From positions 1 to 64,000 of the forward strand of contig JALMLS010000208.1 in the NCBI GenBank assembly GCA_038496445.1: 64,000 bases of DNA. The letters are read 5' to 3'. This document shows, piece by piece, positions 4,501 through 29,644 of the stretch. The notes beneath the pieces are model-generated. The model was not told the origin of the DNA, ran no database searches, and was given only the letters and a program-made list of their open reading frames with translations. The DNA comes from Trichosphaerium sp. ATCC 40318 (taxonomy: Eukaryota > Protista > Tubulinea). The first letter of the stretch is position 1, and every line of letters begins with the position of its first letter. Position numbers and translations under genes: made by a program.

Positions 4501-4754
4501 TTTTATTTAAATAACGAAAGTGAATACTACTCTGGCGGAAGCTGTGAAAGTAGAATGACTTGTTCTGTCATTGTTTCATCGTATAACAAAACACGTATGA
4601 GATAAGTAGTGAAATCGATTTGTCACGTGATAAAATCACTGTTGACTGGATTAAGACCATTCAAAATAATCACGTGAATATCCATGTTTTTCTTCTAGTT
4701 GTTTTACCCTGCGTCGAACCAAACCACTTCATTGACGCAAGCTATAGATTAAAT

Positions 4755-6125
4755 ATGAACGTAAACAGTGCATTCTTTAATGAGATTCCGGTTGAAGTTG
4801 TCGTTCATGTTCTACAATTTGTTTCATTGTTAACTTTAAGATCAGTTGTCCTTGTATCTAGAATATTCGCTAAAATAGCTACAACTCACTTGGGATACGA
4901 TGGAGGAAGACGTATTATCCTCAAGAGAAAGAAGAAGCTAAAAAAGCTATTCAAGGAAGCGCCTCACCTCATCAAAACATGCAGAATCGATGTTAGGTTC
5001 TCAATCAAACAAAAACACTTGAAGCTCTTACAAGGAGCCTATAACCTCAAGCTTTATAGTAGAATTGACCACATTGACTTTGATGGCTTTAAGGTGAACA
5101 GCATTGATCTTACTAATTGTTTATACACATTTACTGACAAACATCTCAAACAACTTGCAGGAACAAAAAGAATTATAGCGAAGGGTTGTAGATTAATTAC
5201 AAGCAATGGTATTAACGCACTGTATGGAGTTCATGCAATTAATTTAAGCTTTTGTGGTAATCTTGGAGATGATTGTTTTACAGCATTGGCTGGAGTTCAT
5301 ACGATAAGTTTGGCTATTACAAATGTAACAGATAATGACATCAAGGCATTGGCTGGAGTTCATACAATTATTCTAAGCTTGTGTAAAGTGACTGATGTAG
5401 GAGTTAAGGCTTTGGCTGGTGTTCATACCATCTGTTTAACTCAGTGCAAGCATGTTACGGATGATGGCATTAAAGCACTGGCAGGGGTTAACACAATTAA
5501 GTTAAACTGGTGTACACAAGTTACTGAAGAGGGTATTGCAGCTTTAGCTGGTGTCCATAAAATTGAGCTCTATAAAACAAATGTTAGAGATGTTAAAGTG
5601 CTTGCTGGGGTACACACAGTGGGTTTAGGACATTGTACCATCACAAATGACATTGTTATAGCATTGGCAGGTGTTCATACTATTGGTCTAAACCATTGTG
5701 ACTCTGTTACAGATGACGGCATTAAAGCCTTGGCTGGTGTTCATACAATTGATATAAGCTTTTGTTTAAATATAACTGATTGTGGTATTGAAGCATTGGC
5801 AGGTGTTCATGCAATTAACATTAGTGGCACTAATGTAACGGATAAGGGTATCAAGGCTTTGGCTGGTGTACATACTATCAGTGTAAGTAGTACAAGAGTT
5901 ACAGATGACGGTGTTAAAGCGCTTGTTGGCGTTCATGCTATTGATTTGGCTTTTTGTAGAGCTGTCACAGATGATGGAGTTAAAGCCCTTGTAGGTGTTT
6001 ACTCAATTAACCTCAAAGGCACTGCAACTTCGAAGAAAATTTATAAATCACTTCCAGAAGTTAAACGACTTGAGCAAAAGCACTATACCTTTTACAGCTT
6101 TCCGTTATTTGATATTAAGATTTAG
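4755..6125 (+). CDS. F-box + LRR protein, intronless
   Basis: ATG 4755 (MNVNSAFFNEIPVEVVVHVLQF, F-box); many GVHTI...VTDDGIKALA repeats; AATAAA near 6162; paralog of 27625-28620. Confidence 0.9.
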   Translation: MNVNSAFFNEIPVEVVVHVLQFVSLLTLRSVVLVSRIFAKIATTHLGYDGGRRIILKRKKKLKKLFKEAPHLIKTCRIDVRFSIKQKHLKLLQGAYNLKLYSRIDHIDFDGFKVNSIDLTNCLYTFTDKHLKQLAGTKRIIAKGCRLITSNGINALYGVHAINLSFCGNLGDDCFTALAGVHTISLAITNVTDNDIKALAGVHTIILSLCKVTDVGVKALAGVHTICLTQCKHVTDDGIKALAGVNTIKLNWCTQVTEEGIAALAGVHKIELYKTNVRDVKVLAGVHTVGLGHCTITNDIVIALAGVHTIGLNHCDSVTDDGIKALAGVHTIDISFCLNITDCGIEALAGVHAINISGTNVTDKGIKALAGVHTISVSSTRVTDDGVKALVGVHAIDLAFCRAVTDDGVKALVGVYSINLKGTATSKKIYKSLPEVKRLEQKHYTFYSFPLFDIKI

Positions 6126-7513
6126 ATTCACCTATACACGTGCACATAATCAAATACCCTAAATAAAGTACAACAGAGTTGTATGTTGTCACAGCCATAG
6201 CTTGTTTCAAAAAAGCAATTGTTGCCTTAGTGTCGAAAATGCCATTTGTACCTACCAATTATTGAACCAAGAGGCAGCCCCACTTTATTCATAATAATTA
6301 CAAGGTAATTACATCGAAAAAAATCCTTCCCAGCTTGCTTGATCAGGCTCCGAAAAGTTCCCACAAATTTTGGAGCCACGTGCCAGCGTCGTACCATGAT
6401 TAACCTAAAAAACCATAAAAAGTAAAATATAAGGAAAGAAAATAAAAAAGTACTGAACCAATCGTACAATTGACAAGCATTGTTTTTGCAGCCAAGGTTA
6501 AAGTGAACATCATTTGTGTCAATCACTTAACACTACTTAACCAAAGTACGTCAGACACAACATGGCGAAAAAAACTTCGATTTTTACGAAGTGTGCAACT
6601 TCTCTTAAAAATCGTTACAATCTATACCTTTGAACTATATTCAGTGCCTTATTGTTGTGTTTACGCTTCAATCTCTTCATGTCTGTTTGTCTACTCAAAT
6701 TATGTCCTGAATGCTCGAATATGTTTAAAGGTTACAACGGAAACCATCTATGCGTGGTTAGGTTGTACAAGGCCGTTTCCTTATAAAAAACAATGCATGC
6801 TCCCAAAAATAGAGTTATATACCTATCCTGTTACCTTTTACGCCCAAGAGGGCCCTTCCTACCCACTGAGCACTGTCTTACGCTTTTGTCTACATGTCTC
6901 GCGTTGTTTTAGCCTACCAGCGCCCCAAAATACCATCAACGCTATAAAACCATGCCTACACCGCTACTCCAGTCATCGTCTAAATATATTACGCGCAGAA
7001 AACTGCTTTCGCCACTGTGCTATAAAAACACAAATCAACATGCAGCAAACACACCTCAAGAACCACGATACCTCTAAACAACACACTACTCCCAAACTAC
7101 CAAAAAGGCAACACTATAAATGGCAAAAACCAAATCACAAACATTATACACTCCCGAACAAACACAAAGATTTCTCCGCTATGCACGCTGCAGAAGTAGC
7201 AAACCACGGCCTTATCTATGCCTATCATCAAACCTCTCAATATGCGGACAAATATAACTCTATTTATATCTCTGTAAATTCCAATAAAACAAACCCGATA
7301 AAAATTCGACCCGGTAAGTCCGCCCGAAGTCACACAAGATCCTGTAATACATACCACTATCACAACAAGCAAAACGTGAGTACCTATACGAATATCGCTA
7401 AATCTAGCTCGTGTAAAAAAATTTGCCTACGAAAACTGCACCTTATTAAATATATCAACAAGATTTTAACAACCAAACACCCACTACATTATCATCCATA
7501 CCACCAATGCATC

Positions 7514-9000
7514 ATGGCCGCCAATAATACCTCCACTGACTTCGACTTTGACGATCTCAATAACTTCGACTTTGCCATTGACAATGACCCTCCTTCTCCC
7601 AAAAAACCTTGCAATAATAAAGGCTTACCTCGTAGCCCTGTCGAGAAAGGTTACCAAAAATTGTATTGTAAAGAGCCTGTAATGATCAATGGTGACTGGC
7701 CAGTCATGGTAGTCCTCAACAACGGCGAAACCTCCTCAAGCGATGTCGAACTCTTCATTGGTTCCAAAGCCAATCACAACATCACCAAATACTCCGGCAG
7801 CATTCAATATCTCCCGATGTTATACGCCCACTTCCCAACCTCTCCTGATGCCGAAGACTTTGCCAACTGGGTCTGGACCAAGGGTGGCGAAGCATACTAC
7901 ATCGCCGACTTCAACCGTGCCATATGCAAGATCCAACGCGTCAACAATCAAAAGTCACGCCAACAATCCAACAACAACCGAAGCTCCAACAACAACAACA
8001 ACAACAACAACCGCAACAAGACCACACAAGTCGTTGGGCACTTTCTCTTGCACCAACAACGCGAGAATGTTGCCAACCTCTCACCTCATGCGCTAGCCCT
8101 CACCTCCTCTTGGGCCAACGACTCTTATGGAAAACTCCTCTTCTACTCTCCGGCTGGCAGAAACATTGCAGTTAGAGAAACTGGTGCGCTCGGCGTTCGT
8201 GGCGGTCCTGTATCTCTCGCAGCACCTATCCTACCTTACCATCCCTTCACGCTTATAGCGCCTCGCCTTCCAAAGCGCGCTGATCCAAACGAAGTCCACG
8301 CTGATGTCCTCGCCTCTCTTGCACCTCACGTTGACTTTGATCAAATTTTCGTGGCAAGCTCCATCTATGCCAAGTCCACCATAGGTTACGCTCTTATTAC
8401 CTTTGACACCCACACTGAAATGCAAGAAGAGCTCGACCGCATGTCTAACCGTACGCGCTACAAAGGTATTCTCAAAGGTTCTGGCCTCGAAATCATCAAC
8501 GAGGATTGGGACTATCGCAAGGATGAACCCAAAAATGCTGCTAAACTTGGTCTCGTAAAGGAGACAGAATATATTCGCCGCAAGGAGCGCGAATCCAAAG
8601 TCCAATCTCGTGCTACTAAAGCTCACTCTGCTGCCATTAAAAAACTGGGAAAAGGGTACGACTTCTCTCTTTCTCTTTTTTTCCAGTCTCTTGCTCGAAA
8701 CGCTTTTCCTCTCTCTCTTGCACTTTTACTCACACTTTATGTAGCCTCAAGGTTCTTGCTGGCAAACTGGAAAACCTCTCTCTCGCCGCTGCTCACAACG
8801 GTGAGCTCATTCGTTCCTTGGTTGATGCCCAAGACACCTCTCCTCCTGCTGATACGCCAATGGCAGATGTCGCTGCTGACATTGTCTTGGATGAAAATGT
8901 CGATCCAAATGCGGTACTTGGTAAACGTCGTAAGGTCCTTAAGAGCGCCAAGAGCGTTAAAAGGAGACGTAGCGCCAGAATTCTCATCGAAGAAGATTAG
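7514..9000 (+). CDS. LINE-A ORF1p, spliced form join(7514..8655,8745..9000): RRM-like RNA-binding protein with basic C-terminus
   Basis: MAANNTSTDF start; RNP1-like GYALITF; splicing gives ...KKLGKG/LKVLAGKLENL...GKRRKVLKSAKSVKRRRSARILIEED*, in frame with the listed 8818-9000 ORF. Confidence 0.72.
8656..8744 (+). other. Predicted spliceosomal intron (89 nt) in LINE-A ORF1
   Basis: GTACGA donor, pyrimidine-rich body, TACTCAC branch-like motif, ATGTAG acceptor; same style and size as host introns in this window. Confidence 0.75.
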
Positions 9001-9332
9001 ACTACCATCAAGTTGTAACTGTAAAGTTTACTGTAGTCCAAATACATATAATATTGTTGTTTATTGCCTTAGTACATTTTTTCTTTCTTGCTCGTTACTT
9101 TTTAGACACACTGACCAATGTCTCCTCCTTTCTAACTTGCCTATCATCGCCTTGGTTGTCTTCTTATCAGCAGCCGTAGTTGAGACAGAAACTTTACACA
9201 CAATAAAACCACTCGTACTTTTCTCTAATCCTCCTCTCTTTCTCCCTTCTGGTATCAATAGTATACCACCTTGCAACCTTCGTTATCTGCACTGTGGCTG
9301 GTGTTTCTTCTTTCCTTGTTTTCTTATGACTC

Positions 9333-12300
9333 ATGACAAGTCAGATAGAGACAAGTGAGAATATGACCTCTAACGAGGACATATACCCAGTCACAGGTGC
9401 TCAAGAACGTAGTTGCAACGTTTCGAACATCACTAACCCTCGAAGAGGCAAATATAGTTTCCAAACGCTCAATTTAGTAACTACAAATCTAAATGGAGGA
9501 TGGAAAGCTAACTCTGAAAGGCTATACACAGAGGCTACCAAACGTGATGTTCACATCATAGCGGTGCAAGAACCTCTTGTCAAACACAATGTCCTATACC
9601 AAAACACACACTACCATCTCAAGAAAGAATATACCATGTACTTTGCGCTCCTCACCAGAGAAGAGAGAGTCGCTAAAGCCCTCACTAACAAAAACAATAA
9701 ACTTCGTAGCAACAAACTCTCCAAAGAGCAACTCAATACGCTAATACAAAACAAAATTGACAGCGATTATGACACCAAAGCATCTGAAGGAGTAATCACT
9801 CTCATCAGAAAAGACATAAACAGGCTCGTCACGCACGTGGAGTACGATCAACATAAAAAGTACATCATCACAGAAATAGCTTATAAAAAGAAAATCTTCA
9901 TTATTGTCAACATATACGCACCCTGTGCATACAGAAAAAACGCAGAATTCATGTCCAGAGTAAAGCAAGCTGTACTAACAAGAAAAAATTCCAACAAAGG
10001 GAAAAAGCATGAAATCATTATACTAGGAGACTTTAATGCGCTCATAAACCCCAAAGACTTCTGGAAACTTGAAAATGCCACCACAATCTTACCACCCAAA
10101 ACGAGCGAAAGCTTAAACAATCTCATCAACACCCACAAACTAACATCAGCATTTCACTCTGTACATTCCAAAACAGTATTTACAAGATACGGTACAGAAA
10201 AAAGTGACAATGCCATGTACAAAACCAAATCGCACATAGACCTTGTACTCATCAAAGCAGCACGTACAAAACTTATCAACAAAATATACGTGGACCTAGA
10301 CACTACAATCTCCAGTGACCACAGGCCTGTATACCTAGAATACATATGGGACACTGCCCAAAAGTACACCGAACCACCGCTTCAACCCAAACCATGCATA
10401 CGCAAGCACACCACTAGTGAGGCCAACAAGGCTTTTGAAGATTTTGACATCACCACTAAATCTAACAACCTACTCATGACCTTCCTAAACAACGCTAATG
10501 AGGACCCTACTAAACTTGTAGAACAATTACAAGAAGACGTGTATGCCCATGCAGCCAAAAAACTTGGCACTAGAAAGAGAGGCAAGAAACACCTTCTATA
10601 CAGTACCAAACTCAACAATGTACGCACCACGCGCAAACAACTACTTAGACACAGAAATAAGTTAAGCAAATACGACAAACGTACCATACCAAACAAACTC
10701 AAAAAACAGGTAAAAGTCTCACTCAAAAGAGCAAACAAAATCACACCCTCCATAAACAAATACGACGCACACATCACATGCGAAGAAACTAGACAACAAG
10801 TGAAAAAAGCCATCATTTTACTAAGTAAAATACAAGATAACACAGCGTCCGAGCTTGTAGCCAAAAAGATTAAAACCAGAATAAACGATCTCATTGATAA
10901 ATATAGTAATGAGCCCAAAAAATTCTTTGACAACCTGCTACACAGGAAAAAAGTACAAACAGCGTCTCCGCTCACGCACCCTACCACCAAACAGGTTATC
11001 CTCAACCCCAAAGAGAAACTAGAAGTCTTCAAAGAGACATGGAAAGAAATCTTGCAAAAATCTAAACCACCGCCAAACATCACACCATACTGGTTACAAC
11101 AACCAGTCAATATCACTAAAAACATGAAAGACGAACCAATCACCTTTGAAGAATACATGTCAGCAGTAAACAACGCAAAAACTAAAAAACAACCAGGCGA
11201 AGACAGACTCACCACCGAAATAATACAAGCAATGGACGAAAAGTACCACAGCATACTTTGGAAAGTATGCCAAAGATGTTTTACGCTGGGAGTTATCCCA
11301 GAAGCATGGAGAACATCCCACCTATATCTAATACACAAACAAGGATCGCCAAACACCGACCCAACCAACTACAGACCTATAGCACTGCTATCAATACAAC
11401 ATAAAATATATACCAGAATCTTGTACGAACGACTCATGAAGTACTTCGAAGATAATAACATCTTCTCCCCTTTACAAAATGGTTTCAGACGAAACAAATC
11501 CACAATCACACAAATCTCCAATCTAATCAACATCTTCGAAGACAACAAACAACACGGAGGACAACTCCACGCCCTCTTTGTAGACATCAAAAAAGCGTTT
11601 GACTCCGTGGAACACTGGAGCATAGAACAAACACTCAAGTACTATAAAGTACCAAACACCTTTGTCCAAGCCATCAAAGGCACCTACTCTAAAGGACTGG
11701 CTGCAATACTTAATCAGGACGGTCTTTCCACTGACTTCAAAATAAAAAATGGAGTCAGACAAGGCGACATCCTGTCACCGCTACTATTCATTATCATACT
11801 TAACCCAATACTGGAATACATTAAAAGCTTAAATATAGGCTATACCTTCCATAACAATAAAAAAATCAACATACCTATGCTAGCATACTGTGATGACCTC
11901 GCACTACTCACCCGAGCCAAAAACAAGTTGTCTATAATGATGACACATCTCAATACATTCTTCGAATACAACCGCATGAAGGTTAACACCAAAAAAACCA
12001 AGTACATGAACTCGCTCAAAGATGGATTACCCATCAGCTACCTCAACACCATGACAAACACCCAGGTCACACTAGACAACGTAGGAAAAGAAGCATCATA
12101 TAAGTACCTAGGTGTAAAAATAAACATGCAATTGAACTGGGCAACAGACGAAAAGTCAGCACTAGCTGCCGTAAAACGCAGACTTACCCTAATCAAGAAA
12201 CGCTACATCCCCCTTGTGTCTCATACAGACATTATAAACAAAGTCATTGTGCCTGCCTTTCAATACCACACAAACTTCTACCTCGTAACAAACGCCACTC

Positions 12301-14252
12301 TAATTAAGATGAGGAGGCTCATTGCCAGTAACATATTCCATTCCATTCCCATGTCAGCTCACTCCAAACATGCCCAACTATGGGTACCAAAAAACCTAGG
12401 TGGCTTCGGGATAATAGAGCCCAAGATGGCTAACCAGATGAGCTTCATCTCCACCATGCACAACTTCAATCTCAATGCGCCTAGTAAAGACTTGGCCAAA
12501 AAAACTACTGTACAAAGGTTGAAAGACAACATATACCTCAATAAGATGGGTAGACACAACCTTAACAAATACCCACACAGCATCGCACTGATAGCCACAC
12601 ATGACATAAACGATGACAGACTCACCACCTATGTCAAACTTCTTAACGAAATAGAACTTGAGGCAATTAACCCAAACAACTCCAATAAATACATACATGA
12701 CAACCTCACTACAGAGGAAGCACAAACATTAAGAATTCTAGGCATCACCAGAATCCACAAATGGACAGATGTCACAGAAAACCAATTCATGAACTACAAA
12801 AAGCTATGCAAAGCGACAAAGATCAAACACAAACTTAACAATTACAGGAAAATATGCAAAATACTATGTTACCCCCGCACCAGGTGCGTCAAAAAGCACT
12901 TCGGAACACCCACGTACAATGCCAGTAAAATCTCCTACCTCAACACTTTCGAGGATGAACACATCAGCAAAAGCCAAAACAATACTATCATGGTATGGAC
13001 AGATGGATCCAAAACACACTACTCCGAAGGAGCAGGATACGGCGTCTACTACGGCCCAGACGACGAAAACAACCACTACGCCAGAACAATATCAGGCGAT
13101 ACAGTGGACGTTGCAGAACTAGAAGCAGCACTCTACGCTATCAAGAACTCAGCACCCGATACCAACATAACACTTTTCACAGACTCGACATACGTCATAC
13201 ACTCGGCCACAAAATGGGCAGATCTAAAACACTCCATTAAAGCTAAAGCGCCCAATGCAGCCCTCATAACAGAACTTAATGAAGCCATCCAAAACAAAAA
13301 CAATAACGGTGCAATGGTCACCATGCACAAAGTACCTAGTCACGTGCCACAAAAAATTAAAGCTATAAAAACCGACAATACCAAATACCCCAACATGATC
13401 AAAGAAATCAGAAAACTTCAAAAGCAATTTGGACAAGACATCAAGTGGATCTTAGAAGGGAATGAAGGAGCGGACCAACTTGCCAAAGACAGTCTTAACC
13501 TCCCATCTGAAACCACACACATGCGACAGGAAGGAGCAGGCACCTACGCATTGTATAACAAACAAAACGAACTCATTGAAGGCAACATCAGAAAGATAAT
13601 CAAAACAAAAGGAGAAGCCAAACATGTCAAAGAATGGATTAAAAGAGAACCTCACCTACAGGCAGTAGACATGGAAATATCCAACGCATGGGGACTATCA
13701 GATCAAATCAAAAACGACAAGGAAATAAAATTCCAACACAAACTTCGCAACAACAAACTATGCTGCAGTAGCAGACAACACAAACAACTCAATAGCACGA
13801 GCACACCAGAACAAAAAGTCAAGTATGCTACACCCACATGCAAACTATGCGGTCATGCAGTCGAAGACGCAGAGCACGTCATCGGCAAATGCCCAGCAAC
13901 AGCGGCACTCAGGAAGAAGCACCACACAAATATTAGGAAAAAATTCTTCAAGGCTTTCCCACGTGCAAAGTATGGAACAGCAAGCAGAAACAAATTCAAA
14001 ATATACTCAAAAAGAATGCGCCTAGGTGCATATATCGCCAAAAGCACAGTCAACAAATGCGTAGAACTAGGATACGCGGACTGGTATGTCAAGGAAAAAC
14101 TAATCAGAATTCAACGCAAAGCAATCTTAGGATTGCAAGCCATATATGCTGAAAGATGCAGGCTACACCAAATATGGTGGGAAAATCACAAGAAAACACT
14201 TAACAACACAGAGCAAAATGATCAAACAGACGTGGTCGGACACGTCACTTAA
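9333..14252 (+). CDS. LINE-A ORF2: AP endonuclease, reverse transcriptase, RNase H, C-terminal Cys/His finger (1639 aa)
   Basis: APE (TTNLNG, VQE, NIYAP, GDFN, SDH); RT (NYRPIAL, DIKKAFDSV, GVRQGDILSPLLF, YCDD, YKYLG); RNase H (TDGS, AELEA, TDS, VPSH, GNEGAD); CKLC...H...C. Confidence 0.97.
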   Translation: MTSQIETSENMTSNEDIYPVTGAQERSCNVSNITNPRRGKYSFQTLNLVTTNLNGGWKANSERLYTEATKRDVHIIAVQEPLVKHNVLYQNTHYHLKKEYTMYFALLTREERVAKALTNKNNKLRSNKLSKEQLNTLIQNKIDSDYDTKASEGVITLIRKDINRLVTHVEYDQHKKYIITEIAYKKKIFIIVNIYAPCAYRKNAEFMSRVKQAVLTRKNSNKGKKHEIIILGDFNALINPKDFWKLENATTILPPKTSESLNNLINTHKLTSAFHSVHSKTVFTRYGTEKSDNAMYKTKSHIDLVLIKAARTKLINKIYVDLDTTISSDHRPVYLEYIWDTAQKYTEPPLQPKPCIRKHTTSEANKAFEDFDITTKSNNLLMTFLNNANEDPTKLVEQLQEDVYAHAAKKLGTRKRGKKHLLYSTKLNNVRTTRKQLLRHRNKLSKYDKRTIPNKLKKQVKVSLKRANKITPSINKYDAHITCEETRQQVKKAIILLSKIQDNTASELVAKKIKTRINDLIDKYSNEPKKFFDNLLHRKKVQTASPLTHPTTKQVILNPKEKLEVFKETWKEILQKSKPPPNITPYWLQQPVNITKNMKDEPITFEEYMSAVNNAKTKKQPGEDRLTTEIIQAMDEKYHSILWKVCQRCFTLGVIPEAWRTSHLYLIHKQGSPNTDPTNYRPIALLSIQHKIYTRILYERLMKYFEDNNIFSPLQNGFRRNKSTITQISNLINIFEDNKQHGGQLHALFVDIKKAFDSVEHWSIEQTLKYYKVPNTFVQAIKGTYSKGLAAILNQDGLSTDFKIKNGVRQGDILSPLLFIIILNPILEYIKSLNIGYTFHNNKKINIPMLAYCDDLALLTRAKNKLSIMMTHLNTFFEYNRMKVNTKKTKYMNSLKDGLPISYLNTMTNTQVTLDNVGKEASYKYLGVKINMQLNWATDEKSALAAVKRRLTLIKKRYIPLVSHTDIINKVIVPAFQYHTNFYLVTNATLIKMRRLIASNIFHSIPMSAHSKHAQLWVPKNLGGFGIIEPKMANQMSFISTMHNFNLNAPSKDLAKKTTVQRLKDNIYLNKMGRHNLNKYPHSIALIATHDINDDRLTTYVKLLNEIELEAINPNNSNKYIHDNLTTEEAQTLRILGITRIHKWTDVTENQFMNYKKLCKATKIKHKLNNYRKICKILCYPRTRCVKKHFGTPTYNASKISYLNTFEDEHISKSQNNTIMVWTDGSKTHYSEGAGYGVYYGPDDENNHYARTISGDTVDVAELEAALYAIKNSAPDTNITLFTDSTYVIHSATKWADLKHSIKAKAPNAALITELNEAIQNKNNNGAMVTMHKVPSHVPQKIKAIKTDNTKYPNMIKEIRKLQKQFGQDIKWILEGNEGADQLAKDSLNLPSETTHMRQEGAGTYALYNKQNELIEGNIRKIIKTKGEAKHVKEWIKREPHLQAVDMEISNAWGLSDQIKNDKEIKFQHKLRNNKLCCSSRQHKQLNSTSTPEQKVKYATPTCKLCGHAVEDAEHVIGKCPATAALRKKHHTNIRKKFFKAFPRAKYGTASRNKFKIYSKRMRLGAYIAKSTVNKCVELGYADWYVKEKLIRIQRKAILGLQAIYAERCRLHQIWWENHKKTLNNTEQNDQTDVVGHVT

Positions 14253-14260
14253 ATTACAAA

Positions 14261-14381
14261 CACTGGTCAGCTGGATGTATATGTACCAGACTGACAAGTG
14301 GTTAGACAAGGAGCCAGGCCCACGGGCCTGGAGGCAACTCACGTTGCCTGCTTTAAGCCAGACTCCTAATGGAGCTCCTTG
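14261..14381 (+). other. Structured 3' UTR of LINE-A
   Basis: Hairpin at 14261-14300; closing stem CAAGGAGC/GCTCCTTG enclosing CAGGCC-CACG-GGCCTG and AGGCAAC-TCAC-GTTGCCT hairpins. Confidence 0.7.
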
Positions 14382-14428
14382 AACAAGACCTGAAGGACTT
14401 GACCACGATAATAGAATAGAATAGAAAC

Positions 14429-17224
14429 ATGGCAAGCATGTCAAAAAAGACAAAAATAAACTAAGAAACTGATTTAAATCATTCTCAAGTGTTCAACGCA
14501 CTTCCTCAAGAGCTTATTGTACATATTTGTGATAAAGTAGAAGCCATAGAAGATTTTAGTTCATTATCAGCGACGTGCTGCTTGTAAGTGCATAAATTAA
14601 TCAATATCTCTGTGTCTAAGCACTAACTTTGCCCAGGCTCGCTTCAATTTGTTCTTCAGAACAGCTACCGTTTTATCGATGTTTTTATGCTCGAAACTGG
14701 TTCTTAGATCCCTATGAACTGCGCTTACAATTCCCCGACGCGTCACCCAGTGATTGGCTCAGTATGTATAAAAAACGACAAAGCGAAGAAAAATCTATGT
14801 TTGCACGTGTCAAGCGCGGAAACCTTGAAAAATCATGTGATAGTTTTTACAACTCTTCCTTTCAACTTACCACTTTGGTACGTACATAGAGTACCATGAT
14901 ACTTTGTAATAATCATATTCAAAAGCGACCACAGTGTTATATTGACAATGACACTGATGCAATAGTATCAAATATTGTACTGAGTATTCTTTCGTACCGT
15001 GTTAGTACTGGTCAGATTTTATCACCTGATGACTATGATTTCATTTTTTGGTATATCTATATCTTTTCAAGGGGTACTGGGCAGTTTTATGTGTTGGAAA
15101 GAATTATAAAAGAGCCTAAAACGGTGAGTACAGAGAACTATTGTTTACTTTTTCTTCTTTCTGGCTTTTCTTCACAGGCTCATTAAGGGGCCACGTGTTG
15201 TGTCTTCACTGTTTTTTACAATTGGGAATCTGACATAATTTTAGAGGCTGTGTCACTTTATCCCACAGATTGTCTGTTCTAGCAAAGAAGTATTCTACAA
15301 ACAATGTGTTTGTGCACCTAAAGTTCTAGAAGCATTGATAAAAAGACTAAAAAATTCAAAAGCTGAAGGGTTAGACGATGACTATGCTTATTGTTGTGAA
15401 CTACTATCAGAGTTGTATCCAAAATCATGTAAGAACATTTTGTTGTTGGAAACTTTGAAATGACTTTTGTGACTGCTTCGTGCTTGTCACAGACTATCTT
15501 AAACAACTCAATGGCTTTAAAAACGTTTGTACTAATCAACTGTTACAGCTTTAGATTCTGCAGCATACGACAATCTTGGTTTATGTGAACTCTCTGAGGA
15601 ATTGATAGAAGATCCAAATCTGAAACGTGATTTTATAATGCCGTTTAATGCTGTGAAACTTGGTCACCCTTATCACTGTAGTCCTGACTTTGTATCTAAA
15701 ATTATTACCCACATGAATCAACTAGCTGGTATAGTCAGGGATAGCACATTAACTTATTACTATGGCATTGTAACAGATGTCATGACAGCGTTTATTGTAA
15801 CTTCATCATACTTTATTGGTCATTTTTTTAATAGTCTTGATGATGAAAAAGAGGAAGATATGAAAACACATAGACGTCTATCTGTTGAAGTATTGGATGT
15901 ATTGATTTTCTTTATAAATCGTGAACTAGAAGAATGTCACATTGTTGATGCTTTAGCAAAAGCAGCATGTACGATACACGTTTTTCTTTTCTTGAAGCAT
16001 TTTTCTTACAACTATTCCTTGTTTATTTTTAAAGAATTTAAACTACACTCTTGTTTCAATTTTCTTCTTTGATTTTTCGTGTTTAGGGACTGCAAGTGAT
16101 ATGATGAATACAAGGAATACTTGGAAACTTATCATAGATATGATGCCTAGATATAGAGATGCTGATGATTTACATTGCAGTCTTTGTCAAGTCCTAAATG
16201 AACCATCAGAAAGAAGTTGTTTAGTAGAGCCATCTTGGATTCATGACTCAGTACTTCGTGGAAAGGTATTAGATGAGATTATCAATTGTCCCCCAAAAAG
16301 TCAAAAGGTTCTACTTAAGAGTGTATCAAATTATATGTGTACGACACCTGAAATGCGACAAGATGTTCTTCAAGTATGTTGAAACTTTTTTTTTCCACGC
16401 CGTTTCTAGTGCATTCAATTCAATCTCGCTGATGGTTTTTAGCGTACAGATGTTTTCAAAATAATCATAGACAAAGCACTTGGTGGTATTCTAGACTGTG
16501 TTGCAAAATGAATCTCACATTCTGTAGATACTTGTGATGACTACGTTCCTATGACTGCTTTGGCGAATATGGCAATCGAGAAAGAATGTACGCCTTGTTT
16601 TTTTTTCAGCTATCATGTGTTTGTTAGTTTGACTTTGCTTTAGTTGCGTATATGGTTTCTCCATATGTAGATAAACTAACAGAGTTTCTTTCTAATGACA
16701 AGTCTAACAAACCTGCTCTGCAGGCACTATGTATGGCACTCGCAATAATGTCACAGCACAGTACAAACAATGATTTGAAATTGATGATTAACATAGCTTT
16801 TTAGAGCCTTTATCTTCAGAACTGTCATCACAAATTAAACGTATTGCGCTAGACATAAAACACACTGAGAAAAAGCCGGTAGAATAGAGTCATTGAAAGT
16901 TAAAGTTGCATTAACTTTATTTTTAGTGTACTTTGGCAATCTTTTTGCAGGACCATCCGATTTTGAAGCTTTCTTTGATCTTTCAGATAGATCAGCTATT
17001 CTATGTGGGTTAGTATTGATGGCACAGATACCAATGATACTTGATCGAGAATGGGTAGTGATTATGCCACGGGTAGGTGTCAAGCCTTATAACTGATTGA
17101 TGCTAACAAAAAAATTGTAATTAAGATGAAACAGTTTTTATCAAGAGTAAGTGACACACAAGATGATGACATTAGCGATCTTGTACCTAAAATACGCCAA
17201 AGAATATCTATGTATAATGTGTAG
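14429..17224 (+). pseudogene. Multi-exon F-box gene with helical C-terminal region, hit at its start codon by LINE-A
   Basis: MASMSKKTKIN*ETDLNHSQVFNALPQELIVHIC (F-box; in-frame TAA at 14462-14464); GT-AG introns link the ORF fragments to ~17224. Confidence 0.65.
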
Positions 17225-25098: not shown

Positions 25099-26332
25099 AT
25101 GGATCGCACAAGGAAATAAAAAACCGTTTGATTTGGCATCTGATACATTAAATCAAAGGTAAACGTTTTTTGTTGATGTATTGTTCTAAAATAATTTGTA
25201 GCGCTCAAAAAACGTTACTGGACATGCCCACTGAGATTATAACTATTATTCTAAGTCATACAACCAAATCGCGATTTGCGGCTTGTCAAACATGTCGTAT
25301 CCTTTCTTCTATCATTCACGACATTGTTGGGTACCATAGTATACGTATAACAACAGAAAAACAAGTTAAACAAGTTGTAAAGCATTGTGGAATCATGAAA
25401 CACACAATGATCAATTTAGTAAATAGTAGAGCTTTAAGGTTTCCGTCTGACAAGATTGTGGAACAATTTGCAGGAGTTCATACAATTGCCTTGATAGGTT
25501 GTCGACAAATTACAGACAAATCAATGATATATTTGGCAGGAGTTCATACAATTGACCTTTCTAATACATCAGTGACAGATGAAGGAGTCAAAGCACTTGT
25601 TGGCATACATACTATTAAACTTTCTCACACCTCTATAACTGATATCGGAGTGAAAGCACTTGTTGGAGTTCATACACTTGACTTAAGCTTTTGTGAGCAA
25701 ATTACAGATGAAGGTGTTATACCTCTTACAGGTGTTCATACTATTGACCTTTATCGTACATCAGTGACAGATGAAGGAGTGAAAGCACTCATTGGTGTTC
25801 ATACTATTCAACTTTGTGGCACATCTGTAACAGATGAAGGAGTGAAAGCACTCAAAGGTGTTCATAGTATTGACCTTCGTTGGACTGCAATGACAGATGA
25901 AGCACTCCAAAGTCTTGTTGGTGTACACACAATTGACCTGCGTTATTGTGATAATATTACAGTTGAAGGAATCAAAGCACTCAAAGGTGTTTGTGAGATA
26001 AGTCTTTCTTTAGCAAGAGACTCATGGCTCAAACAACTTGGTGATGTACACACTGTCCATATCAGCCAAGGAAGGTATGTAACAGATGATGGAACAAATC
26101 ATTGACCAATGTCAAATACCTTGATTTGAGTGGTTTCCTAAAGATAACAGACTTGGGTTTTAAGACATTGGTCAACCTTGAGCGCTTAGCCCTGTATTTC
26201 TGTCCACAGATTACAAATGGTTGCTTGAACCACTTACCGTCTTTAAAACAGGTTGCAGGATTGAAAAATACCAAACTTACACAAGCAGCTGTTGAGGCAA
26301 TGGGTATCCAATATTGTGGACTGTACTTGTAA
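25099..26332 (+). pseudogene. F-box + LRR gene with frameshift near 26095
   Basis: LLDMPTEIITIIL F-box; GVHTI repeats; LRR continues in another frame (26102-26332); one 5' intron. A sequencing error is not excluded. Confidence 0.75.
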
Positions 26333-27119
26333 CTAGTTCAATTTATTTGTAATTAGTTAATAAATAGGCAATATTTATAAGCCATTGTAATGTTGTTTTG
26401 TCTATTGTACAATTTTCTAACTTTTGGATTATCATATTCTTTTTAAGTGTGTGCTATAAATAGCTTCTCAACTTATCCTGACTTTGGTAACAGACCTGCA
26501 TTTGGAATTGGTACTGGTATTTTTGGGAGATCCACTCGAAGAGGTCCACAAGGCACTAAATAAAATCAAAACCAATCATATCACAATAGCTTCTATTAAC
26601 AAATGCTGGTGACACTGAATTGTCTGCCTTTTCTGGCGTCCTTTCATTACTAAGATCGTTTGCCTCTGTTTAATCTTATAAAGTACTCGCCCTGTATCAA
26701 AAACGTAGAGGTGGCCGCTAAACGGCTTAGCCGATACCAGACCACGACCACCTCTACAATTATGTCAATATCAATTTGCTCTGTATTTGTAGCTTAACGA
26801 ACCTCTTTAAAATTATCAAAAACACAACACTGACAACCAATGATCCGCATGGGAATCCAGACTTCTGCTTTTAATCAAACAGACAATATTTCATCAAAGT
26901 TTTAAGTAGAAGATGATAAAACAGAATTTATGGCTGTACACGTGTTTTCTCCGGTTACAGAAGTTGGGTAAGCTTAGATTACTCTCATAAATCAACTACA
27001 AACAGCCTACAGCCCTTATACAGAACCTGCTCGAGCAGAATCACCCACATCCCACAAGACGTTTCGTTCAAGTTTTCAGCCTGACAGGTCAAATATGGAA
27101 ATAAAAATTTTTGTGGGAT

Positions 27120-27455
27120 TGTTAAATCACGTGGGTTTAAACTTGACTATGTGAGGGCATCACATTTTAAAAGGTGAGATTCGCCAGTTCTGTCAGAAGT
27201 GTCAAATCCATCAGTAGAGCTGACAGATCAGGCAGAAACTGGATTTTTTTGTTTGTTTTTATCAAGCTAAAAGCCCTGGTAGCGCCCACAGCAACGTCGG
27301 TAGTGTTGTGAGGTTTTTATGTCAATATAACTGCTTTGTTGTTTCAATGCTGTGAGAGCGCTTCTGTTAGCGTGGAGTAGGCGCTAGCGCAGCGTTTGTA
27401 AGCTATGTACACATATGTTGATTTTTAAAGCAAACACAAACGGCAAATAGTGTTG
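27120..27455. repeat. Dispersed two-module repeat shared with 57850-58225
   Basis: CTGTCAGAAGTGTCAAATCC...GGCAGAAACTGG recurs at ~58167-58225 in the same orientation; 27285-27455 recurs as reverse complement at ~57850-58025. Confidence 0.75.
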
Positions 27456-27624
27456 GTGGAAAGCTCAAGCTTTGTAGATCAATAACCTTTTAATTCGCTT
27501 TTAGCTCAATAAAGGATGTTGACAATTCGATTGACTTAACACAAAAATACAATCTCATGCTTAAGTTTACCTAAAACCGTTTAGCGCTAGCTTTGAAACT
27601 ACTTCTTGCTAGTACACAGAAAAA

Positions 27625-28620
27625 ATGAACCAAAACAGCGCATTCTTTGATGAGATACCTGTTGAAGTCATTGTTCATATTCTACAATACGTTTCGCTCT
27701 TAACTATGCACTCAGTTGTTCGTACATCCAAACTTTTATCAAATATCGCAATAAATCACGTGGGATACGTAAACACAAGGAAAATCGTTCTTAAAACACC
27801 AAAAAAGCTGAAAGAGCTCTTCAAAACACTGCCACACCTCATACACACCAATAGTATTACTCTTCGATTCTCTATCAAACAAAAGCATCTAAAGTATCTA
27901 CAAGGAGTATACAATCTAAAATTAAAGATAAAAGACTTGCTGAAGGTTGATTTTACAAACCTCAAGATTGTTAACTGTATTAACCTCTTTCATTGTAAGA
28001 ATCTTACTGATGATCACCTTGTACAACTTGCTGGAGTACACAAGATTATATTGTGGAACACAAATGTGACAGATAAGGGTGTTAGAGCGTTGTCTGGTGT
28101 TCACACGATTGACTTACGCAATTGTATAAATGTTACAAGCGATGGTATTAAAGCACTAGCTGGTGTTCATTCTATTAAACTTCGTGGCTGTAGTGTTACA
28201 GACAATGGTGTTAAGGCATTGGCTGGTGTTCATAAAATTCTCCTGGATAAATGTGATGTAACAGATGATGGCATCAAAGCGTTGGTTGGCGTTCATACGA
28301 TCAGAATATATAGTTGTGACTCTGTTACAGATGATGGTATCAAAGCACTAGCAGGTGTTCATAAAATTGACTTAAGCATGGATCATATTACAGATGATGG
28401 CATCAAAGCGTTGTCTGGTGTTCATACTATTAGACTACAGGATTGCCATAGTGTTACAAATGATGGTATCAAAGCATTAACTGGAGTTAATACCATTGTT
28501 GTGGAATATTGTATACAAGTTACAGAAGCTGGCATAAAAGCATTGGAGGGTGTTCCTTCTGTAACGTTTTTTGATGAACCTGTAGGTGGTTTGCTTCAAC
28601 GTTTACTTCGTAAAAAGTAG
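27625..28620 (+). CDS. F-box + LRR protein, intronless
   Basis: MNQNSAFFDEIPVEVIVHILQY plus GVH repeats; close paralog of 4755-6125. Confidence 0.9.
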   Translation: MNQNSAFFDEIPVEVIVHILQYVSLLTMHSVVRTSKLLSNIAINHVGYVNTRKIVLKTPKKLKELFKTLPHLIHTNSITLRFSIKQKHLKYLQGVYNLKLKIKDLLKVDFTNLKIVNCINLFHCKNLTDDHLVQLAGVHKIILWNTNVTDKGVRALSGVHTIDLRNCINVTSDGIKALAGVHSIKLRGCSVTDNGVKALAGVHKILLDKCDVTDDGIKALVGVHTIRIYSCDSVTDDGIKALAGVHKIDLSMDHITDDGIKALSGVHTIRLQDCHSVTNDGIKALTGVNTIVVEYCIQVTEAGIKALEGVPSVTFFDEPVGGLLQRLLRKK

Positions 28621-29644
28621 CAGTTTATGTTGACTTACAAATAAAACCTGAACCTTGCACATGTCGTGCAACAGAACATTCCAATAATTTAAGTGTTGTT
28701 TAGTACTACTACAATCACTTGCAAAAAGGCTTTAGAAATTTATCATACAATATTGAAATACATGTTGTACAGATCATCTATTAGACATATTTCAAACCCC
28801 TGACCACTTTCTTCAATAATAATATAACAAACGAATTATTATTTTGTGAGAGTGGAACATGCAAGAAAGGAGAAAACGAGAGCTGTGGCAGTCATTTTGT
28901 GTTTTTCTATTTTGCCTGTTAACTAGGTAATGATATTCAGTCAACGGGCTCTGTGACACTCCGGATATAACGCTATATAGCGATCCATAACTTGTGTATA
29001 CAAACCTTACTTATTAGTACCTATACAACACCACTTGTTATCTTGTCAGTTACAAACTATTTTGATTTTTAACACTGTTCTATCATTAACGTCCAAAATG
29101 ATATACGTGCTAGTAACGTCCTTTCTCAAGTTCTTTTTGAAATCATTCAATGTAAGTTCTTTGAAGATGGTAAGGTTTATAATCAAGTAAAATTGTTCAC
29201 GTTTTACAGAAAAAGGACTCAAAGCTTAGAGATGACGTTTGTCTCAACCGTGTGTTGATCCATGTTTAGAACTACCTTCTAGAAGTTTTACCTACAAGCT
29301 ATGGATTGGTTGTAATGTATTACTTGGTAGATACAAGGTATGTAGCAAATTAGAGAACCCACTGTAGGCTTTCTTAGGATGCCAAACTTGCCAAAATTCA
29401 AATAGTGCGCCACAAGTAGCCCAAGGGACTTTCCGGGATAAATTGGCCAAATTTCTAAAGCAAAAAGAGCTTGTACACTACACAAGTAGTGCCAGCAAAA
29501 ATACCTTTAGAACACATAAGCACATTTCTGGCTTTTACTTTTATTGCGTCTTTATACGTTGAATAAACATACATGGTAAGGATTCAAGCTCAAGAGCATG
29601 CACATAATAAAATTGTATGAGTTTAATTCTTCTTCTATCAATGC

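What the first reader, a model, noticed from the sequence alone, without database searches (positions are those of the whole stretch)
8600..9360. Intron-retention / internal-polyA switch in a LINE: spliceosomal intron inside LINE-A ORF1
Seen: an 89-nt GT-AG intron-like segment (8656-8744, 3n+2). Removing it changes frame into a protein-like 85-codon exon (helical, acidic, then NLS-like KRRK..KRRR) ending at TAG 9000, followed by AATACA (9041), AATAAA (9202) and U-rich tracts. Retaining it leaves the original frame open to 9358, overlapping the pol start (9333). Established: LINEs normally lack introns because they are copied from RNA; Drosophila copia and Arabidopsis EVADE make excess Gag from a spliced subgenomic RNA. 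Inference: spliced, internally polyadenylated RNA makes ORF1p but lacks the 3' UTR needed for reverse transcription. Only unspliced RNA makes pol and is copied, so the intron is kept. I know of no description of this for APE LINEs but could not search.
Basis: partly seen in the sequence, partly recalled or inferred. Interest (0 to 1): 0.92.

Follow-up and report, generated by a model that had tools for sequence, protein, structure and literature searches.

The report
LINE with a frame-switching intron
A jumping gene (LINE) in this microbial eukaryote keeps an ordinary-looking small intron in its first gene: cut out, the message would finish the first protein, and left in, the reading frame is held open up to the start of the copying enzyme, a trick known from plant and fly LTR elements but which I found no report of for LINEs. 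No RNA data could be had to prove the splicing.

Summary
Window 8656-8744 is an 89-nt GT-AG segment (GTACGA...ACTCAC...TGTAG, 3n+2, phase 2) in ORF1 of a full-length APE/RT/RNase H LINE (6567-14425, 8-bp target duplication).

It is not chance. The same phase-2, 3n+2 intron sits at the same aligned ORF1 position in five diverged lineages of this genome and one metagenome relative.

- In the one pair close enough to test, substitutions follow the ORF1 frame before the intron, no frame inside it, and the -1 frame after it.
- The intron-retained frame has no stops through exon 2, where 2-10 are expected from codon resampling. It also has none through unconserved spacer.
- That frame ends on or next to the ORF2 ATG (ATGA in three lineages; 26-nt overlap here).

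Best reading: splicing yields complete ORF1p. The unspliced RNA carries ribosomes to the ORF2 start, so only intron-bearing RNA makes pol and is copied. This is a LINE counterpart of the Ty1/copia shGAG strategy.

Not shown: splicing itself (no RNA run was listed) and the internal poly(A) site (weak support only). One lineage has a 3n+1 intron I cannot explain.

The scan has noted the same design on other DNA of this genome.

The parts
6559..6566 (+). 5' copy of the target-site duplication AACATGGC
   Evidence: The only 8-mer shared by the two junction regions that abuts both the 3' tail end and the conserved 5' motif. About 0.9 chance 8-mer matches are expected anywhere in the two regions, but roughly 5e-4 at both junctions.
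6567..14425 (+). Full-length LINE-A (7859 bp): leader, ORF1 with intron, spacer, ORF2 (APE, RT, RNase H, Cys-rich tail), 3' UTR and (AATAG)3A tail
   Evidence: Pfam hits on ORF2: RVT_1 1e-37, RNase_H 6.5e-12, Exo_endo_phos 5.5e-6. Target duplication and tail. Single copy at the DNA level.
6567..6600 (+). 5'-terminal A-run plus hairpin (CTTCG-ATTTTTA-CGAAG), a motif shared by the 5' ends of sister lineages
   Evidence: Alignment of five 5' ends. The stem is CTTC/GAAG in four and CCTC/GAGG in C510. Function not tested. No Rfam hit.
6567..7513 (+). Leader with no stop in the ORF1 frame, although not protein-like
   Evidence: 0 stops in the ORF1 frame against 17 and 16 in the other frames over the 356 codons tested (6446-7513), P<1/2000. 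The same holds in C376, C1, C510 and C75. The leader holds 12 out-of-frame ATGs.
7514..8655 (+). ORF1 exon 1 (380 codons plus 2 nt). It starts at a Met that is invariant in the family and includes an RNP1-like GYALITF motif.
   Evidence: Alignment A1 shows M1 invariant and the donor 2-3 residues after an invariant Leu. The profile hits an RRM-repeat protein at the GYAxITF region (E 2.7e-6). No Pfam family matched.
8647..8653 (+). G_GGA_AAA, a canonical -1 slippery heptamer in the ORF1 frame just before the donor
   Evidence: Read from the sequence. It is seen only in this element and is the basis of the frameshift rival.
8656..8744 (+). Candidate spliceosomal intron: 89 nt, phase 2, GTACGA...pyrimidine-rich...ACTCAC(N11)AG
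   Evidence: Homologous introns: C376 53 nt, C1 86 nt, C510/C269 53 nt, C506/C431 59 nt, L062 62 nt. All are GT-AG, 3n+2, phase 2, with a CTNAC-type branch site. Two host introns are 53 and 72 nt with the same signals.
8745..9000 (+). Exon 2: C-terminal module of ORF1p (helical, acidic, basic tail) in the -1 frame, ending at TAG 8998-9000
   Evidence: An equivalent module lies in the -1 frame in all sister lineages. In C75 versus C334, substitutions fall on the third positions of this frame (66 against 18 and 11). In the outside relative L056 the module is in frame with ORF1 and there is no intron.
8656..9358 (+). Intron-retained continuation of the ORF1 frame (234 codons, not protein-like, no stops), ending at TGA 9356-9358
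   Evidence: 0 stops where 7.4 are expected across exon 2, and P=0.0055 for the spacer.
9001..9332 (+). Spacer between the exon 2 stop and the ORF2 ATG. It holds AATACA (9041) and AATAAA (9202) and is T-rich.
   Evidence: AATAAA is present in this interval in all 7 elements examined.
9333..14252 (+). ORF2 (1639 aa). The ATG at 9333 overlaps the end of the unspliced ORF1 frame by 26 nt. A second ATG at 9363 lies 5 nt after that stop.
14410..14425 (+). 3' tail AATAGAATAGAATAGA
14426..14433 (+). 3' copy of the target-site duplication AACATGGC

Best explanation
LINE-A carries a genuine U2-type spliceosomal intron near the end of ORF1, and this intron works as a reading-frame switch between two uses of the element's RNA.

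(1) Spliced RNA. Removing 89 nt (3n+2) joins ORF1 exon 1 to exon 2, which encodes the conserved helical, acidic and basic C-terminus of ORF1p. Translation ends at TAG 9000, 333 nt before ORF2, so this RNA serves mainly to make ORF1p. It may also end at a poly(A) site in the spacer.

(2) Unspliced RNA. The ORF1 frame continues through the intron, through exon 2 read in the +1 register, and through unconserved spacer. None of this is protein-like, but it contains no stop codons. It terminates on or next to the ORF2 ATG. Ribosomes are thereby delivered to the ORF2 start for termination-reinitiation. In some relatives they read straight into ORF2 as a fusion.

LINE ORF2 proteins act preferentially on the RNA that encoded them. 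So only intron-containing RNA would be reverse transcribed, which would explain how a retroelement keeps an intron.

Shown here: the anatomy, its conservation, the switch in the frame under selection, and the selection against stops. Inferred: that splicing occurs, reinitiation, cis-preference and polyadenylation.
For: Anatomy at the stated coordinates.

Homologous introns:
- GT-AG, 3n+2, phase-2 introns of 53-89 nt occur in five lineages of this genome that share only 28-40% protein identity: WIN, C376, C1, C510/C269, C506/C431. The metagenome contig L062 has one too.
- Each has a CTNAC-type branch site 8-20 nt before the AG.
- In alignment A1 the donor lies 2-3 residues after an invariant Leu in all six aligned sequences, including C75/C334.

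C75 versus C334 substitutions by codon position:
- ORF1 core: 105/22/8, following the ORF1 frame.
- Intron: 5/8/8, with no frame. Its ends are conserved and its middle has diverged.
- Exon 2: 66 against 18 and 11, following the -1 frame.
- Spacer: 83/66/61, saturated, yet free of stops in both copies.

Stops in the retained frame:
- None across exon 2, against 7.4, 3.9, 2.0, 9.3, 9.8, 3.1 and 3.4 expected. P<2e-4 for WIN, C75 and C334; 0.004 for C376; 0.018 for C506; 0.017 for L062; 0.09 for C510.
- Spacer: P=0.0055 (WIN) and <1/2000 (C75, C334).

The stop of the retained frame against the ORF2 ATG:
- ATGA in C376, C510/C269 and C1.
- ATGTCTGA in C506.
- 11-nt and 14-nt overlaps in C75 and C334.
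- A 26-nt overlap in WIN, with a second ATG 5 nt after the stop.

The -1 frame is closed by a stop inside the intron in C376, C506 and C75/C334. The shift therefore cannot happen upstream of the intron.

Intron-bearing RNA has been copied:
- WIN has a target duplication and a repeat tail.
- C269 is a 99.7% identical copy of C510 that lacks the 5' part of the leader and keeps the intron.
- No intronless copy was found.

Outside relatives found through ORF2:
- L056 has the simple state: ORF1 with the tail in frame and a TAATG stop-start overlap.
- L055 and L057 have a frame-switch intron plus one frame open into ORF2.

Precedents:
- SART1 UAAUG coupling (PMC3894237, citing Kojima 2005).
- The Ty1/copia shGAG strategy (PMC5580714).
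Against: - There is no RNA evidence of any kind. The look-up of sequencing runs listed no run for the element, so neither the splice junction nor the isoform 3' ends were seen.
- C75/C334 carry a 58-nt (3n+1, phase 0) intron at the homologous position. Canonical splicing there runs into TGA after two codons, although the -1 frame exon is clearly under purifying selection. The simple model fails in that lineage unless a further +1 event occurs.
- In L062 the retained frame stops 201 nt before the ORF2 ATG. The stop-start rule is therefore not universal, or that 2x-coverage contig is imperfect.
- In WIN the overlap is 26 nt rather than ATGA.
- The leader is also free of stops and holds 12 out-of-frame ATGs, which this model does not explain.
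- Each family has only 1-2 copies, so 'no intronless copies' rests on about ten loci.
Confidence: 0.6

Rival explanations
1. The intron is real and spliced, but the open retained frame does not serve ORF2 translation. It only protects the unspliced genomic RNA from nonsense-mediated or other translation-dependent decay. ORF2 would start by another route, such as an IRES or leaky scanning.
For: Selection against stops is shown, but its purpose is not. The leader is stop-free too, so a general 'no stop anywhere' rule could apply. In L062 the frame ends 201 nt before the ORF2 ATG. PMC5580714 argues that avoiding NMD shapes the copia isoforms.
Against: The stop of the retained frame falls on or within 26 nt of the ORF2 ATG in all seven elements of this genome. 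In three independent lineages it is the tetranucleotide ATGA. Mere avoidance of stops would not place the first stop there. Relatives fuse the frame to ORF2 outright.
Confidence: 0.15
2. There is no splicing. Exon 2 is reached on unspliced RNA by a -1 programmed ribosomal frameshift or by transcriptional slippage, and the 'intron' is a spacer or stimulator.
For: The frame change is -1 in every lineage. WIN has a perfect G_GGA_AAA heptamer at 8647-8653 and an A6 run at 8639-8644. The -1 frame is open from 8641.
Against: In C376, C506 and C75/C334 the -1 frame has a stop inside the segment, 5-17 nt before the AG, and no slippery heptamer follows it. No slippery motif is shared among lineages. 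All lineages instead share GT, a branch-site motif and AG. In C75 versus C334 the segment has conserved ends and a diverged middle with no codon periodicity.
Confidence: 0.07
3. Exon 2 is an independent overlapping gene, translated from its own start, and the long ORF1 frame including the extension is the true ORF1 protein.
For: In C376 and C510 the -1 frame module begins with ATG right at the acceptor.
Against: WIN, C1, C506, C75 and L062 have no ATG near the start of the module. The extension shows no conservation or periodicity in the ORF1 frame. In L056 the module is simply the in-frame C-terminus of ORF1.
Confidence: 0.04
4. These are not mobile LINEs but vertically inherited, domesticated LINE-derived genes. 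They keep introns as any host gene does.
For: Each family has only 1-2 copies.
Against: WIN has a target duplication and a repeat tail. C269 is a 99.7% identical copy lacking the 5' part at another locus. Many diverged lineages with intact APE-RT-RNase H ORF2 coexist. Several copies are decayed or carry nested insertions, as transposon copies do.
Confidence: 0.03
5. It is a chance GT-AG pair and chance open frames in a compositionally skewed sequence.
For: The sense strand is A/C-rich, which lowers stop frequency somewhat.
Against: The other two frames carry 9-24 stops over the same stretches. Shuffle and codon-resampling tests reject chance. The layout recurs in lineages whose DNA no longer aligns.
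Confidence: 0.01

Closest known systems
Ty1/copia shGAG strategy (Arabidopsis EVADE, Drosophila copia; PMC5580714) and BARE (PMC3735527)
   Same: An intron inside the retroelement's coding region is spliced in a subset of transcripts. Splicing shifts the frame so that translation stops and only the structural protein is made. The unspliced RNA stays open into pol and is the RNA that is copied. In EVADE, splicing is coupled to premature polyadenylation.
   Different: Those are LTR elements with a single GAG-POL frame and virus-like particles. This is an APE-type non-LTR element. Here the exon after the intron encodes a conserved 85-170 aa domain overprinted on the open frame. Pol is reached through a stop-start overlap rather than a continuous polyprotein in this lineage. 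Splicing is not yet shown here.
SART1 (Bombyx telomeric LINE) UAAUG stop-start coupling (Kojima et al. 2005, cited in PMC3894237)
   Same: The ORF1 stop overlaps the ORF2 ATG, and ORF2 is made by termination-reinitiation on a bicistronic LINE RNA. The outside relative L056 has exactly TAATG.
   Different: In SART1 the natural end of ORF1 is the coupled stop and there is no intron. Here the coupled stop belongs to a non-coding continuation that is read only when the intron is retained.
Human L1 splicing and SpIREs (PMC5860796); functional splice sites in zebrafish ZfL2-1 (from my own knowledge, not checked here)
   Same: LINE RNA can be spliced by the host spliceosome.
   Different: There, splicing is incidental and disabling. 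Spliced copies are dead-on-arrival insertions, and the sites are not a conserved part of the coding design.
Penelope-like elements with retained introns (Arkhipova 2003, discussed in PMC8557442)
   Same: They are retroelements whose genomic copies keep spliceosomal introns.
   Different: They belong to a different class (GIY-YIG endonuclease, telomerase-like RT). Their introns are mostly in the 5' UTR or promoter region. No frame-switch role has been described, and the cited paper calls the significance of retention unknown.
Ogre LTR retrotransposons of legumes (from my own knowledge, not checked here)
   Same: A conserved intron lies inside the coding region of a retroelement, and splicing changes what is translated.
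   Different: In Ogre, splicing is needed to join gag-pro to RT-INT, which is the opposite polarity. It is an LTR element.

Membership tests
U2-type spliceosomal intron | GT at the 5' end and AG at the 3' end | tested here: met
   GT at 8656-8657 and AG at 8743-8744. GT-AG also holds in all homologous segments: C376, C1, C510/C269, C506/C431, C75/C334, L062 and L055.
U2-type spliceosomal intron | Branch-site motif and pyrimidine tract shortly upstream of the AG; length within the host range | tested here: met
   ACTCAC lies 11 nt before the AG, and the tract is CT-rich. Relatives have CTTAC, CTCAC, ACTAAC and ACTCAC. Lengths are 53-89 nt. Two host introns supported by protein continuity are 53 nt (GTAAGT..CACTAAC..CAG) and 72 nt (GTGCGT..CTGAC..TAG).
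U2-type spliceosomal intron | Removal restores a continuous conserved reading frame | tested here: met
   Met in WIN, C376, C1, C510/C269, C506 and L062. Not met in C75/C334: 58 nt, with a stop after 2 codons.
U2-type spliceosomal intron | The spliced junction is observed in RNA | not testable with these tools
   No run was listed for the element.
APE-type non-LTR retrotransposon (LINE) | ORF2 with an APE endonuclease followed by a reverse transcriptase | tested here: met
   Exo_endo_phos 5.5e-6, Exo_endo_phos_2 6.5e-7, RVT_1 1e-37, and additionally RNase_H 6.5e-12. RT relatives are LINE-like proteins.
APE-type non-LTR retrotransposon (LINE) | Hallmarks of target-primed insertion: target-site duplication, 3' tail, copies lacking the 5' end | tested here: met
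   8-bp duplication AACATGGC and (AATAG)3A tail. C269 lacks the 5' part of the leader relative to C510.
Ty1/copia-type shGAG expression strategy | Splicing shifts the frame to a stop, while the unspliced RNA stays open to pol | tested here: met
   This is met at the sequence level.
Ty1/copia-type shGAG expression strategy | The spliced RNA is prematurely polyadenylated just downstream | tested here: inconclusive
   AATAAA lies between the exon 2 stop and the ORF2 ATG in 7 of 7 elements. In C376, C1 and C510 it overlaps the exon 2 TAA. The region is A-rich and no 3' ends were observed.
Ty1/copia-type shGAG expression strategy | LTR retrotransposon of the Ty1/copia lineage | tested here: not met
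   There are no LTRs and there is an APE endonuclease. It works like the strategy but is not a member.
Stop-start (termination-reinitiation) coupling as in SART1 | The upstream ORF stop overlaps or abuts the downstream ATG | tested here: met
   ATGA in C376, C510/C269 and C1. Overlaps of 8, 11 and 14 nt in C506, C75 and C334. A 26-nt overlap plus an ATG 5 nt after the stop in WIN. TAATG in L056. Exception: L062, with a 201-nt gap.
Stop-start (termination-reinitiation) coupling as in SART1 | ORF2 translation depends on termination of the upstream ORF | not testable with these tools
   This needs reporters or ribosome profiling.
-1 programmed ribosomal frameshift site | A slippery heptamer X_XXY_YYZ in frame, with the -1 frame open from there on, conserved in relatives | tested here: not met
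   It is present only in WIN (G_GGA_AAA 8647-8653). Relatives lack it and have -1 frame stops inside the segment.

The most novel reading that the evidence does not exclude
A whole clade of APE LINEs, in this genome and in uncultured relatives, uses host splicing as its ORF1/ORF2 expression switch. Introns are kept free of stops, and exons are overprinted with an open frame. Only intron-retaining RNA then lets ribosomes reach ORF2, by stop-start coupling or by fusion. Because ORF2p acts in cis, intron retention would be self-perpetuating. That would be the first mechanism explaining stable inheritance of spliceosomal introns by a non-LTR retrotransposon. It would also be a convergent reinvention of the copia shGAG strategy.
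Probability: 0.5. Interest if true: 0.85.

Novelty: new variant of a known kind. Interest (0 to 1): 0.78.

Why it matters
LINEs are copied from RNA and are expected to lose introns, and splicing of L1 is regarded as a disabling accident. A LINE lineage that has kept an intron at one position while its proteins diverged to 30% identity, and has shaped several hundred non-coding codons around it, would change two things.

- It would show that non-LTR elements can use host splicing to set the ORF1:ORF2 ratio, as copia elements do.
- It would offer a concrete, testable answer to how ORF2 translation is tied to the RNA that gets copied.

It is also a clean natural case of selection for an open but meaningless reading frame, which is useful for studying reinitiation and RNA surveillance.

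Tried and rejected
- **RNA evidence.** The look-up of sequencing runs with the whole element (8 kb, kind rna) listed none.
- **ORF1 homologues by word search.** None were found.
- **Pfam on ORF1, exon 2, the leader and the extension.** Nothing significant.
- **Rfam (E-value mode) on 5900-15000.** Only a chance snoRNA-like match at E=4. No ribozyme family matched.
- **The A-run and hairpin at the 5' end.** It does not fit an HDV-like P1/P3 register by eye, and I did not pursue it.
- **AlphaFold of the ORF1 core with a 6-sequence alignment.** Mean pLDDT was 41, too poor for a fold search.
- **De novo intron scan of the window.** Few candidates and little use.
- **Canonical GT-AG solutions for C75/C334 that reach the -1 frame.** None exist within the non-coding segment.
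- **BLASTP of the WIN ORF1 core against the L062 ORF1 core.** It gave only a 12-aa match, although the family profile hits L062's ORF1 at 3e-42. I did not resolve this. The ORF2 N-termini are 28% identical.
- **Literature.** Five searches found no LINE with a conserved coding intron. The library lacks most subscription journals.

Full report
**Observation**

- ORF1 starts at ATG 7514 and is in frame up to 8655.
- 8656-8744 is GTACGA...(CT-rich)...ACTCAC-N11-AG, 89 nt (3n+2), interrupting a codon after its second base.
- Joining 8655 to 8745 gives Gly, then LKVLAGKLENLSLAAAHNGELIRSLVDAQDTSPPADTPMADVAADIVLDENVDPNAVLGKRRKVLKSAKSVKRRRSARILIEED, then TAG 8998-9000.
- Without removal, the ORF1 frame stays open to TGA 9356-9358.
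- The ORF2 ATG is at 9333, and a second in-frame ATG is at 9363.
- AATACA (9041) and AATAAA (9202) are present.

**The element**

ORF2 (9333-14252) has APE, RT and RNase H domains. An 8-bp duplication, AACATGGC, abuts both the (AATAG)3A tail and the conserved 5' motif. This sets the element at 6567-14425.

At the DNA level it is single copy in the 70-Mb assembly. The genome also holds sister lineages with 28-40% protein identity:
- C376
- C1
- C510 and C269 (99.7% identical to each other)
- C431 and C506 (99.6-99.9% identical)
- C75 and C334 (about 80% identical)

**Is the intron real?**

No RNA run was listed, so the case is comparative.

(a) Every sister lineage has, after the RRM-like part of ORF1, a module of helix, acidic stretch and basic tail. 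It is encoded in the -1 frame and preceded by a short GT...AG segment.

| Lineage | Length (nt) | 5' end | Branch motif | 3' end |
|---|---|---|---|---|
| C376 | 53 | GTACCA | CTTAC | CTAG |
| C1 | 86 | GTACCA | ACTCAC | ATAG |
| C510/C269 | 53 | GTATGC | CTCAC | ACAG |
| C506/C431 | 59 | GTACGA | ACTAAC | AAAG |

All four are 3n+2 and phase 2, like the window's intron.

(b) In a protein alignment of six ORF1 cores, the donor falls 2-3 residues after an invariant Leu in all six. The position is therefore homologous.

(c) A profile search of 1.8 billion proteins found one outside ORF1 relative (P0121, E 3e-42). Its contig, L062 (an ENA metagenome, GC 46%), has a 62-nt GTACGT..ACTCAC..GCAG intron at the same place and phase. 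Exon 2 there starts LKEICEKIG, against LKVLAGKLE here.

(d) C75 and C334 are close enough for substitution analysis.

| Region | Differences by codon position | Reading |
|---|---|---|
| ORF1 core | 105/22/8 | third positions of the ORF1 frame |
| 58-nt segment | 5/8/8 | no frame; conserved ends and branch region, scrambled middle |
| Exon 2 | 66 against 18 and 11 | third positions of the -1 frame |
| After the exon 2 stop | 83/66/61 | saturated, no frame |

(e) In C376, C506 and C75/C334 the -1 frame is closed by a stop inside the segment, 5-17 nt before the AG, and no slippery site follows. This argues against a ribosomal frameshift as the general mechanism. The window element alone has G_GGA_AAA at 8647-8653.

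(f) Two host introns supported by protein continuity are 53 and 72 nt, with GTAAGT or GTGCGT, CTAAC or CTGAC, and YAG.

**The retained frame**

In every lineage the ORF1 frame, read without splicing, runs on through three stretches:
- the intron;
- exon 2, read in its +1 register;
- unconserved spacer.

It stops at the ORF2 ATG:
- ATGA in C376, C510/C269 and C1
- ATGTCTGA in C506
- 11-nt and 14-nt overlaps in C75 and C334
- a 26-nt overlap, plus an ATG 5 nt after the stop, in the window

This is selected, not accidental.
- Resampling synonymous codons of exon 2, with each element's ORF2 codon usage, predicts stops in the overlapping frame where none is found.
- The predicted means are 7.4 (WIN), 3.9 (C376), 2.0 (C510), 9.3 (C75), 9.8 (C334), 3.1 (C506) and 3.4 (L062).
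- P is below 2e-4 for WIN, C75 and C334. It is 0.004 for C376, 0.018 for C506, 0.017 for L062 and 0.09 for C510.
- The spacers have 0 stops against 3-16 in the other frames. P=0.0055 for WIN and <1/2000 for C75 and C334. C75 and C334 no longer align there.

**Wider picture**

RT-based relatives from metagenomes and a Logan assembly show both the plain and the derived states.
- L056 has an intronless ORF1. Its helix, acidic stretch and basic tail are in frame, and its stop overlaps the ORF2 ATG as TAATG, as in SART1 (PMC3894237).
- L055 has a 44-nt GTAAGA..CTTAC..ATAG intron near the ORF1 N-terminus that shifts to the -1 frame. One frame stays open for 2181 codons, straight into ORF2.
- L057 is similar, with 2541 codons open.
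- LINE-B of this window (minus strand, about 45.2-53 kb) also runs ORF1 into APE in frame.

**Mechanism proposed**

Spliced RNA makes complete ORF1p and stops 333 nt before ORF2. Unspliced RNA carries ribosomes to the ORF2 start, where they reinitiate. With cis-preference of ORF2p, only intron-bearing RNA would be copied.

This matches what is seen:
- No intronless copy was found among about ten loci.
- There is an intron-bearing copy with a target duplication.
- There is an intron-bearing copy that lacks the 5' end.

AATAAA lies between the exon 2 stop and the ORF2 ATG in 7 of 7 elements, and it overlaps the exon 2 TAA in three. The region is A-rich, however, and no 3' ends were seen.

**Problems**

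1. Splicing is inferred, not observed.
2. C75/C334 have a 58-nt, phase-0 intron. Canonical splicing there reads ...CAA|TAT CAA TGA. The selected exon 2 frame would then need a +1 shift at CAA-UGA-Y, or something else I have not seen. The same lineage has an upstream intron candidate of 240 nt in C75 and 273 nt in C334. Both lengths are multiples of 3 and both are free of stops.
3. In L062 the retained frame stops 201 nt before the ORF2 ATG.
4. The 947-nt leader is also free of stops in the ORF1 frame (P<1/2000 in five lineages). It holds 12 out-of-frame ATGs. ORF1's Met is invariant. How ribosomes reach ORF1 is therefore open.

**Literature and earlier notes**

Five full-text searches found no LINE with a conserved coding intron. 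They did find L1 SpIREs, Penelope-like element introns, and the copia and BARE strategies.

The scan's own notes show that the same design was reported before on other pieces of this genome and on LINE-B of this window. Those notes are unchecked, and none had RNA evidence for the LINEs. I reached the coupling reading before consulting them.

**Verdict**

It is a new variant of a known kind: a copia-like splicing switch in a non-LTR element, combined with stop-start coupling.

Noticed in passing
window 6567-7513: The 947-nt leader has no stop in the ORF1 frame (17 and 16 in the other frames over 6446-7513), yet it is not protein-like and holds 12 out-of-frame ATGs. The same holds in C376, C1, C510 and C75. 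ORF1's Met is invariant, so it is unclear why the leader must stay open.
   Followed up: partly
window 6567-6600; L044 about 1045-1090; L046 about 1367-1410: The element's 5' ends share an A-run followed by a hairpin (CTTC-U-rich loop-GAAG) and CACCTCTTCG. C510 has CCTC/GAGG, a compensatory change. The A-run could pair with the U-rich loop. There is no Rfam match.
   Followed up: partly
window 9355-9457: A second intron-like segment: GTGAGA...CACTAAC...ATATAG, 103 nt, phase 2. Removing it would fuse the retained ORF1 frame in frame to ORF2 at the start of the APE domain. It is not evident in the relatives and may be chance.
   Followed up: partly
L049 (G000:C75:88479-88536, minus) and L050 (G000:C334:12485-12542): The homologous intron is 58 nt (3n+1, phase 0). 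Spliced, ORF1 would end YQ* at CAA-TGA-Y, yet the -1 frame exon is under purifying selection. This resembles antizyme-type +1 shift sites but is unexplained.
   Followed up: partly
L049/L050, ORF1 between TRG and KLIDPS (C75 local 1571-1810; C334 local 2060-2332): An upstream intron candidate (GTATCG...AAAATAG) of 240 nt in C75 and 273 nt in C334. Both lengths are multiples of three and both are free of stops in the ORF1 frame, with unalignable interiors.
   Followed up: partly
window about 45277-52966, minus strand: LINE-B: the ORF at 51893-49905 runs from ORF1-like sequence through junk into the APE domain in one frame. ORF2 is broken into pieces further on. It is already the subject of another finding.
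   Followed up: no
L053 (G000:C431) and L052 (G000:C506): Two 99.6-99.9% identical copies share an insertion of about 945 nt inside the ORF1 RRM region, and each has its own further insertion of about 1 kb. The shared insert ends in GRVFPFTFPIGKQGGLLKNSHFYFTT, a motif also found at window 44291-43467.
   Followed up: no
L056 2480-2540 (Logan SRR30000139 contig): An outside LINE relative with an intronless ORF1 and a TAATG stop-start overlap with ORF2. This is the plain state from which the intron design could derive.
   Followed up: partly
L062 6170-6376 (ENA ERZ25072490 contig): In this sister element the retained frame stops 201 nt before the ORF2 ATG, which lies in the same frame. It is either an exception to the stop-start rule or a flaw in a 2x-coverage contig.
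   Followed up: no
window 4620-6125, 25170-31048 and others: A cluster of paralogous F-box plus leucine-rich-repeat genes (repeat ...AGVHTIDLS.C..VTD.GIKAL...). LINE-A sits between two of them, in the same orientation as the upstream one, and inserted right after an ATG (AACATGGC).
   Followed up: no
G000:C8 and C56 (L058-L061): Four intronless HSP70 genes with almost equal profile scores, in two inverted pairs, beside several HSP70 paralogues with many introns of about 40-90 nt.
   Followed up: no
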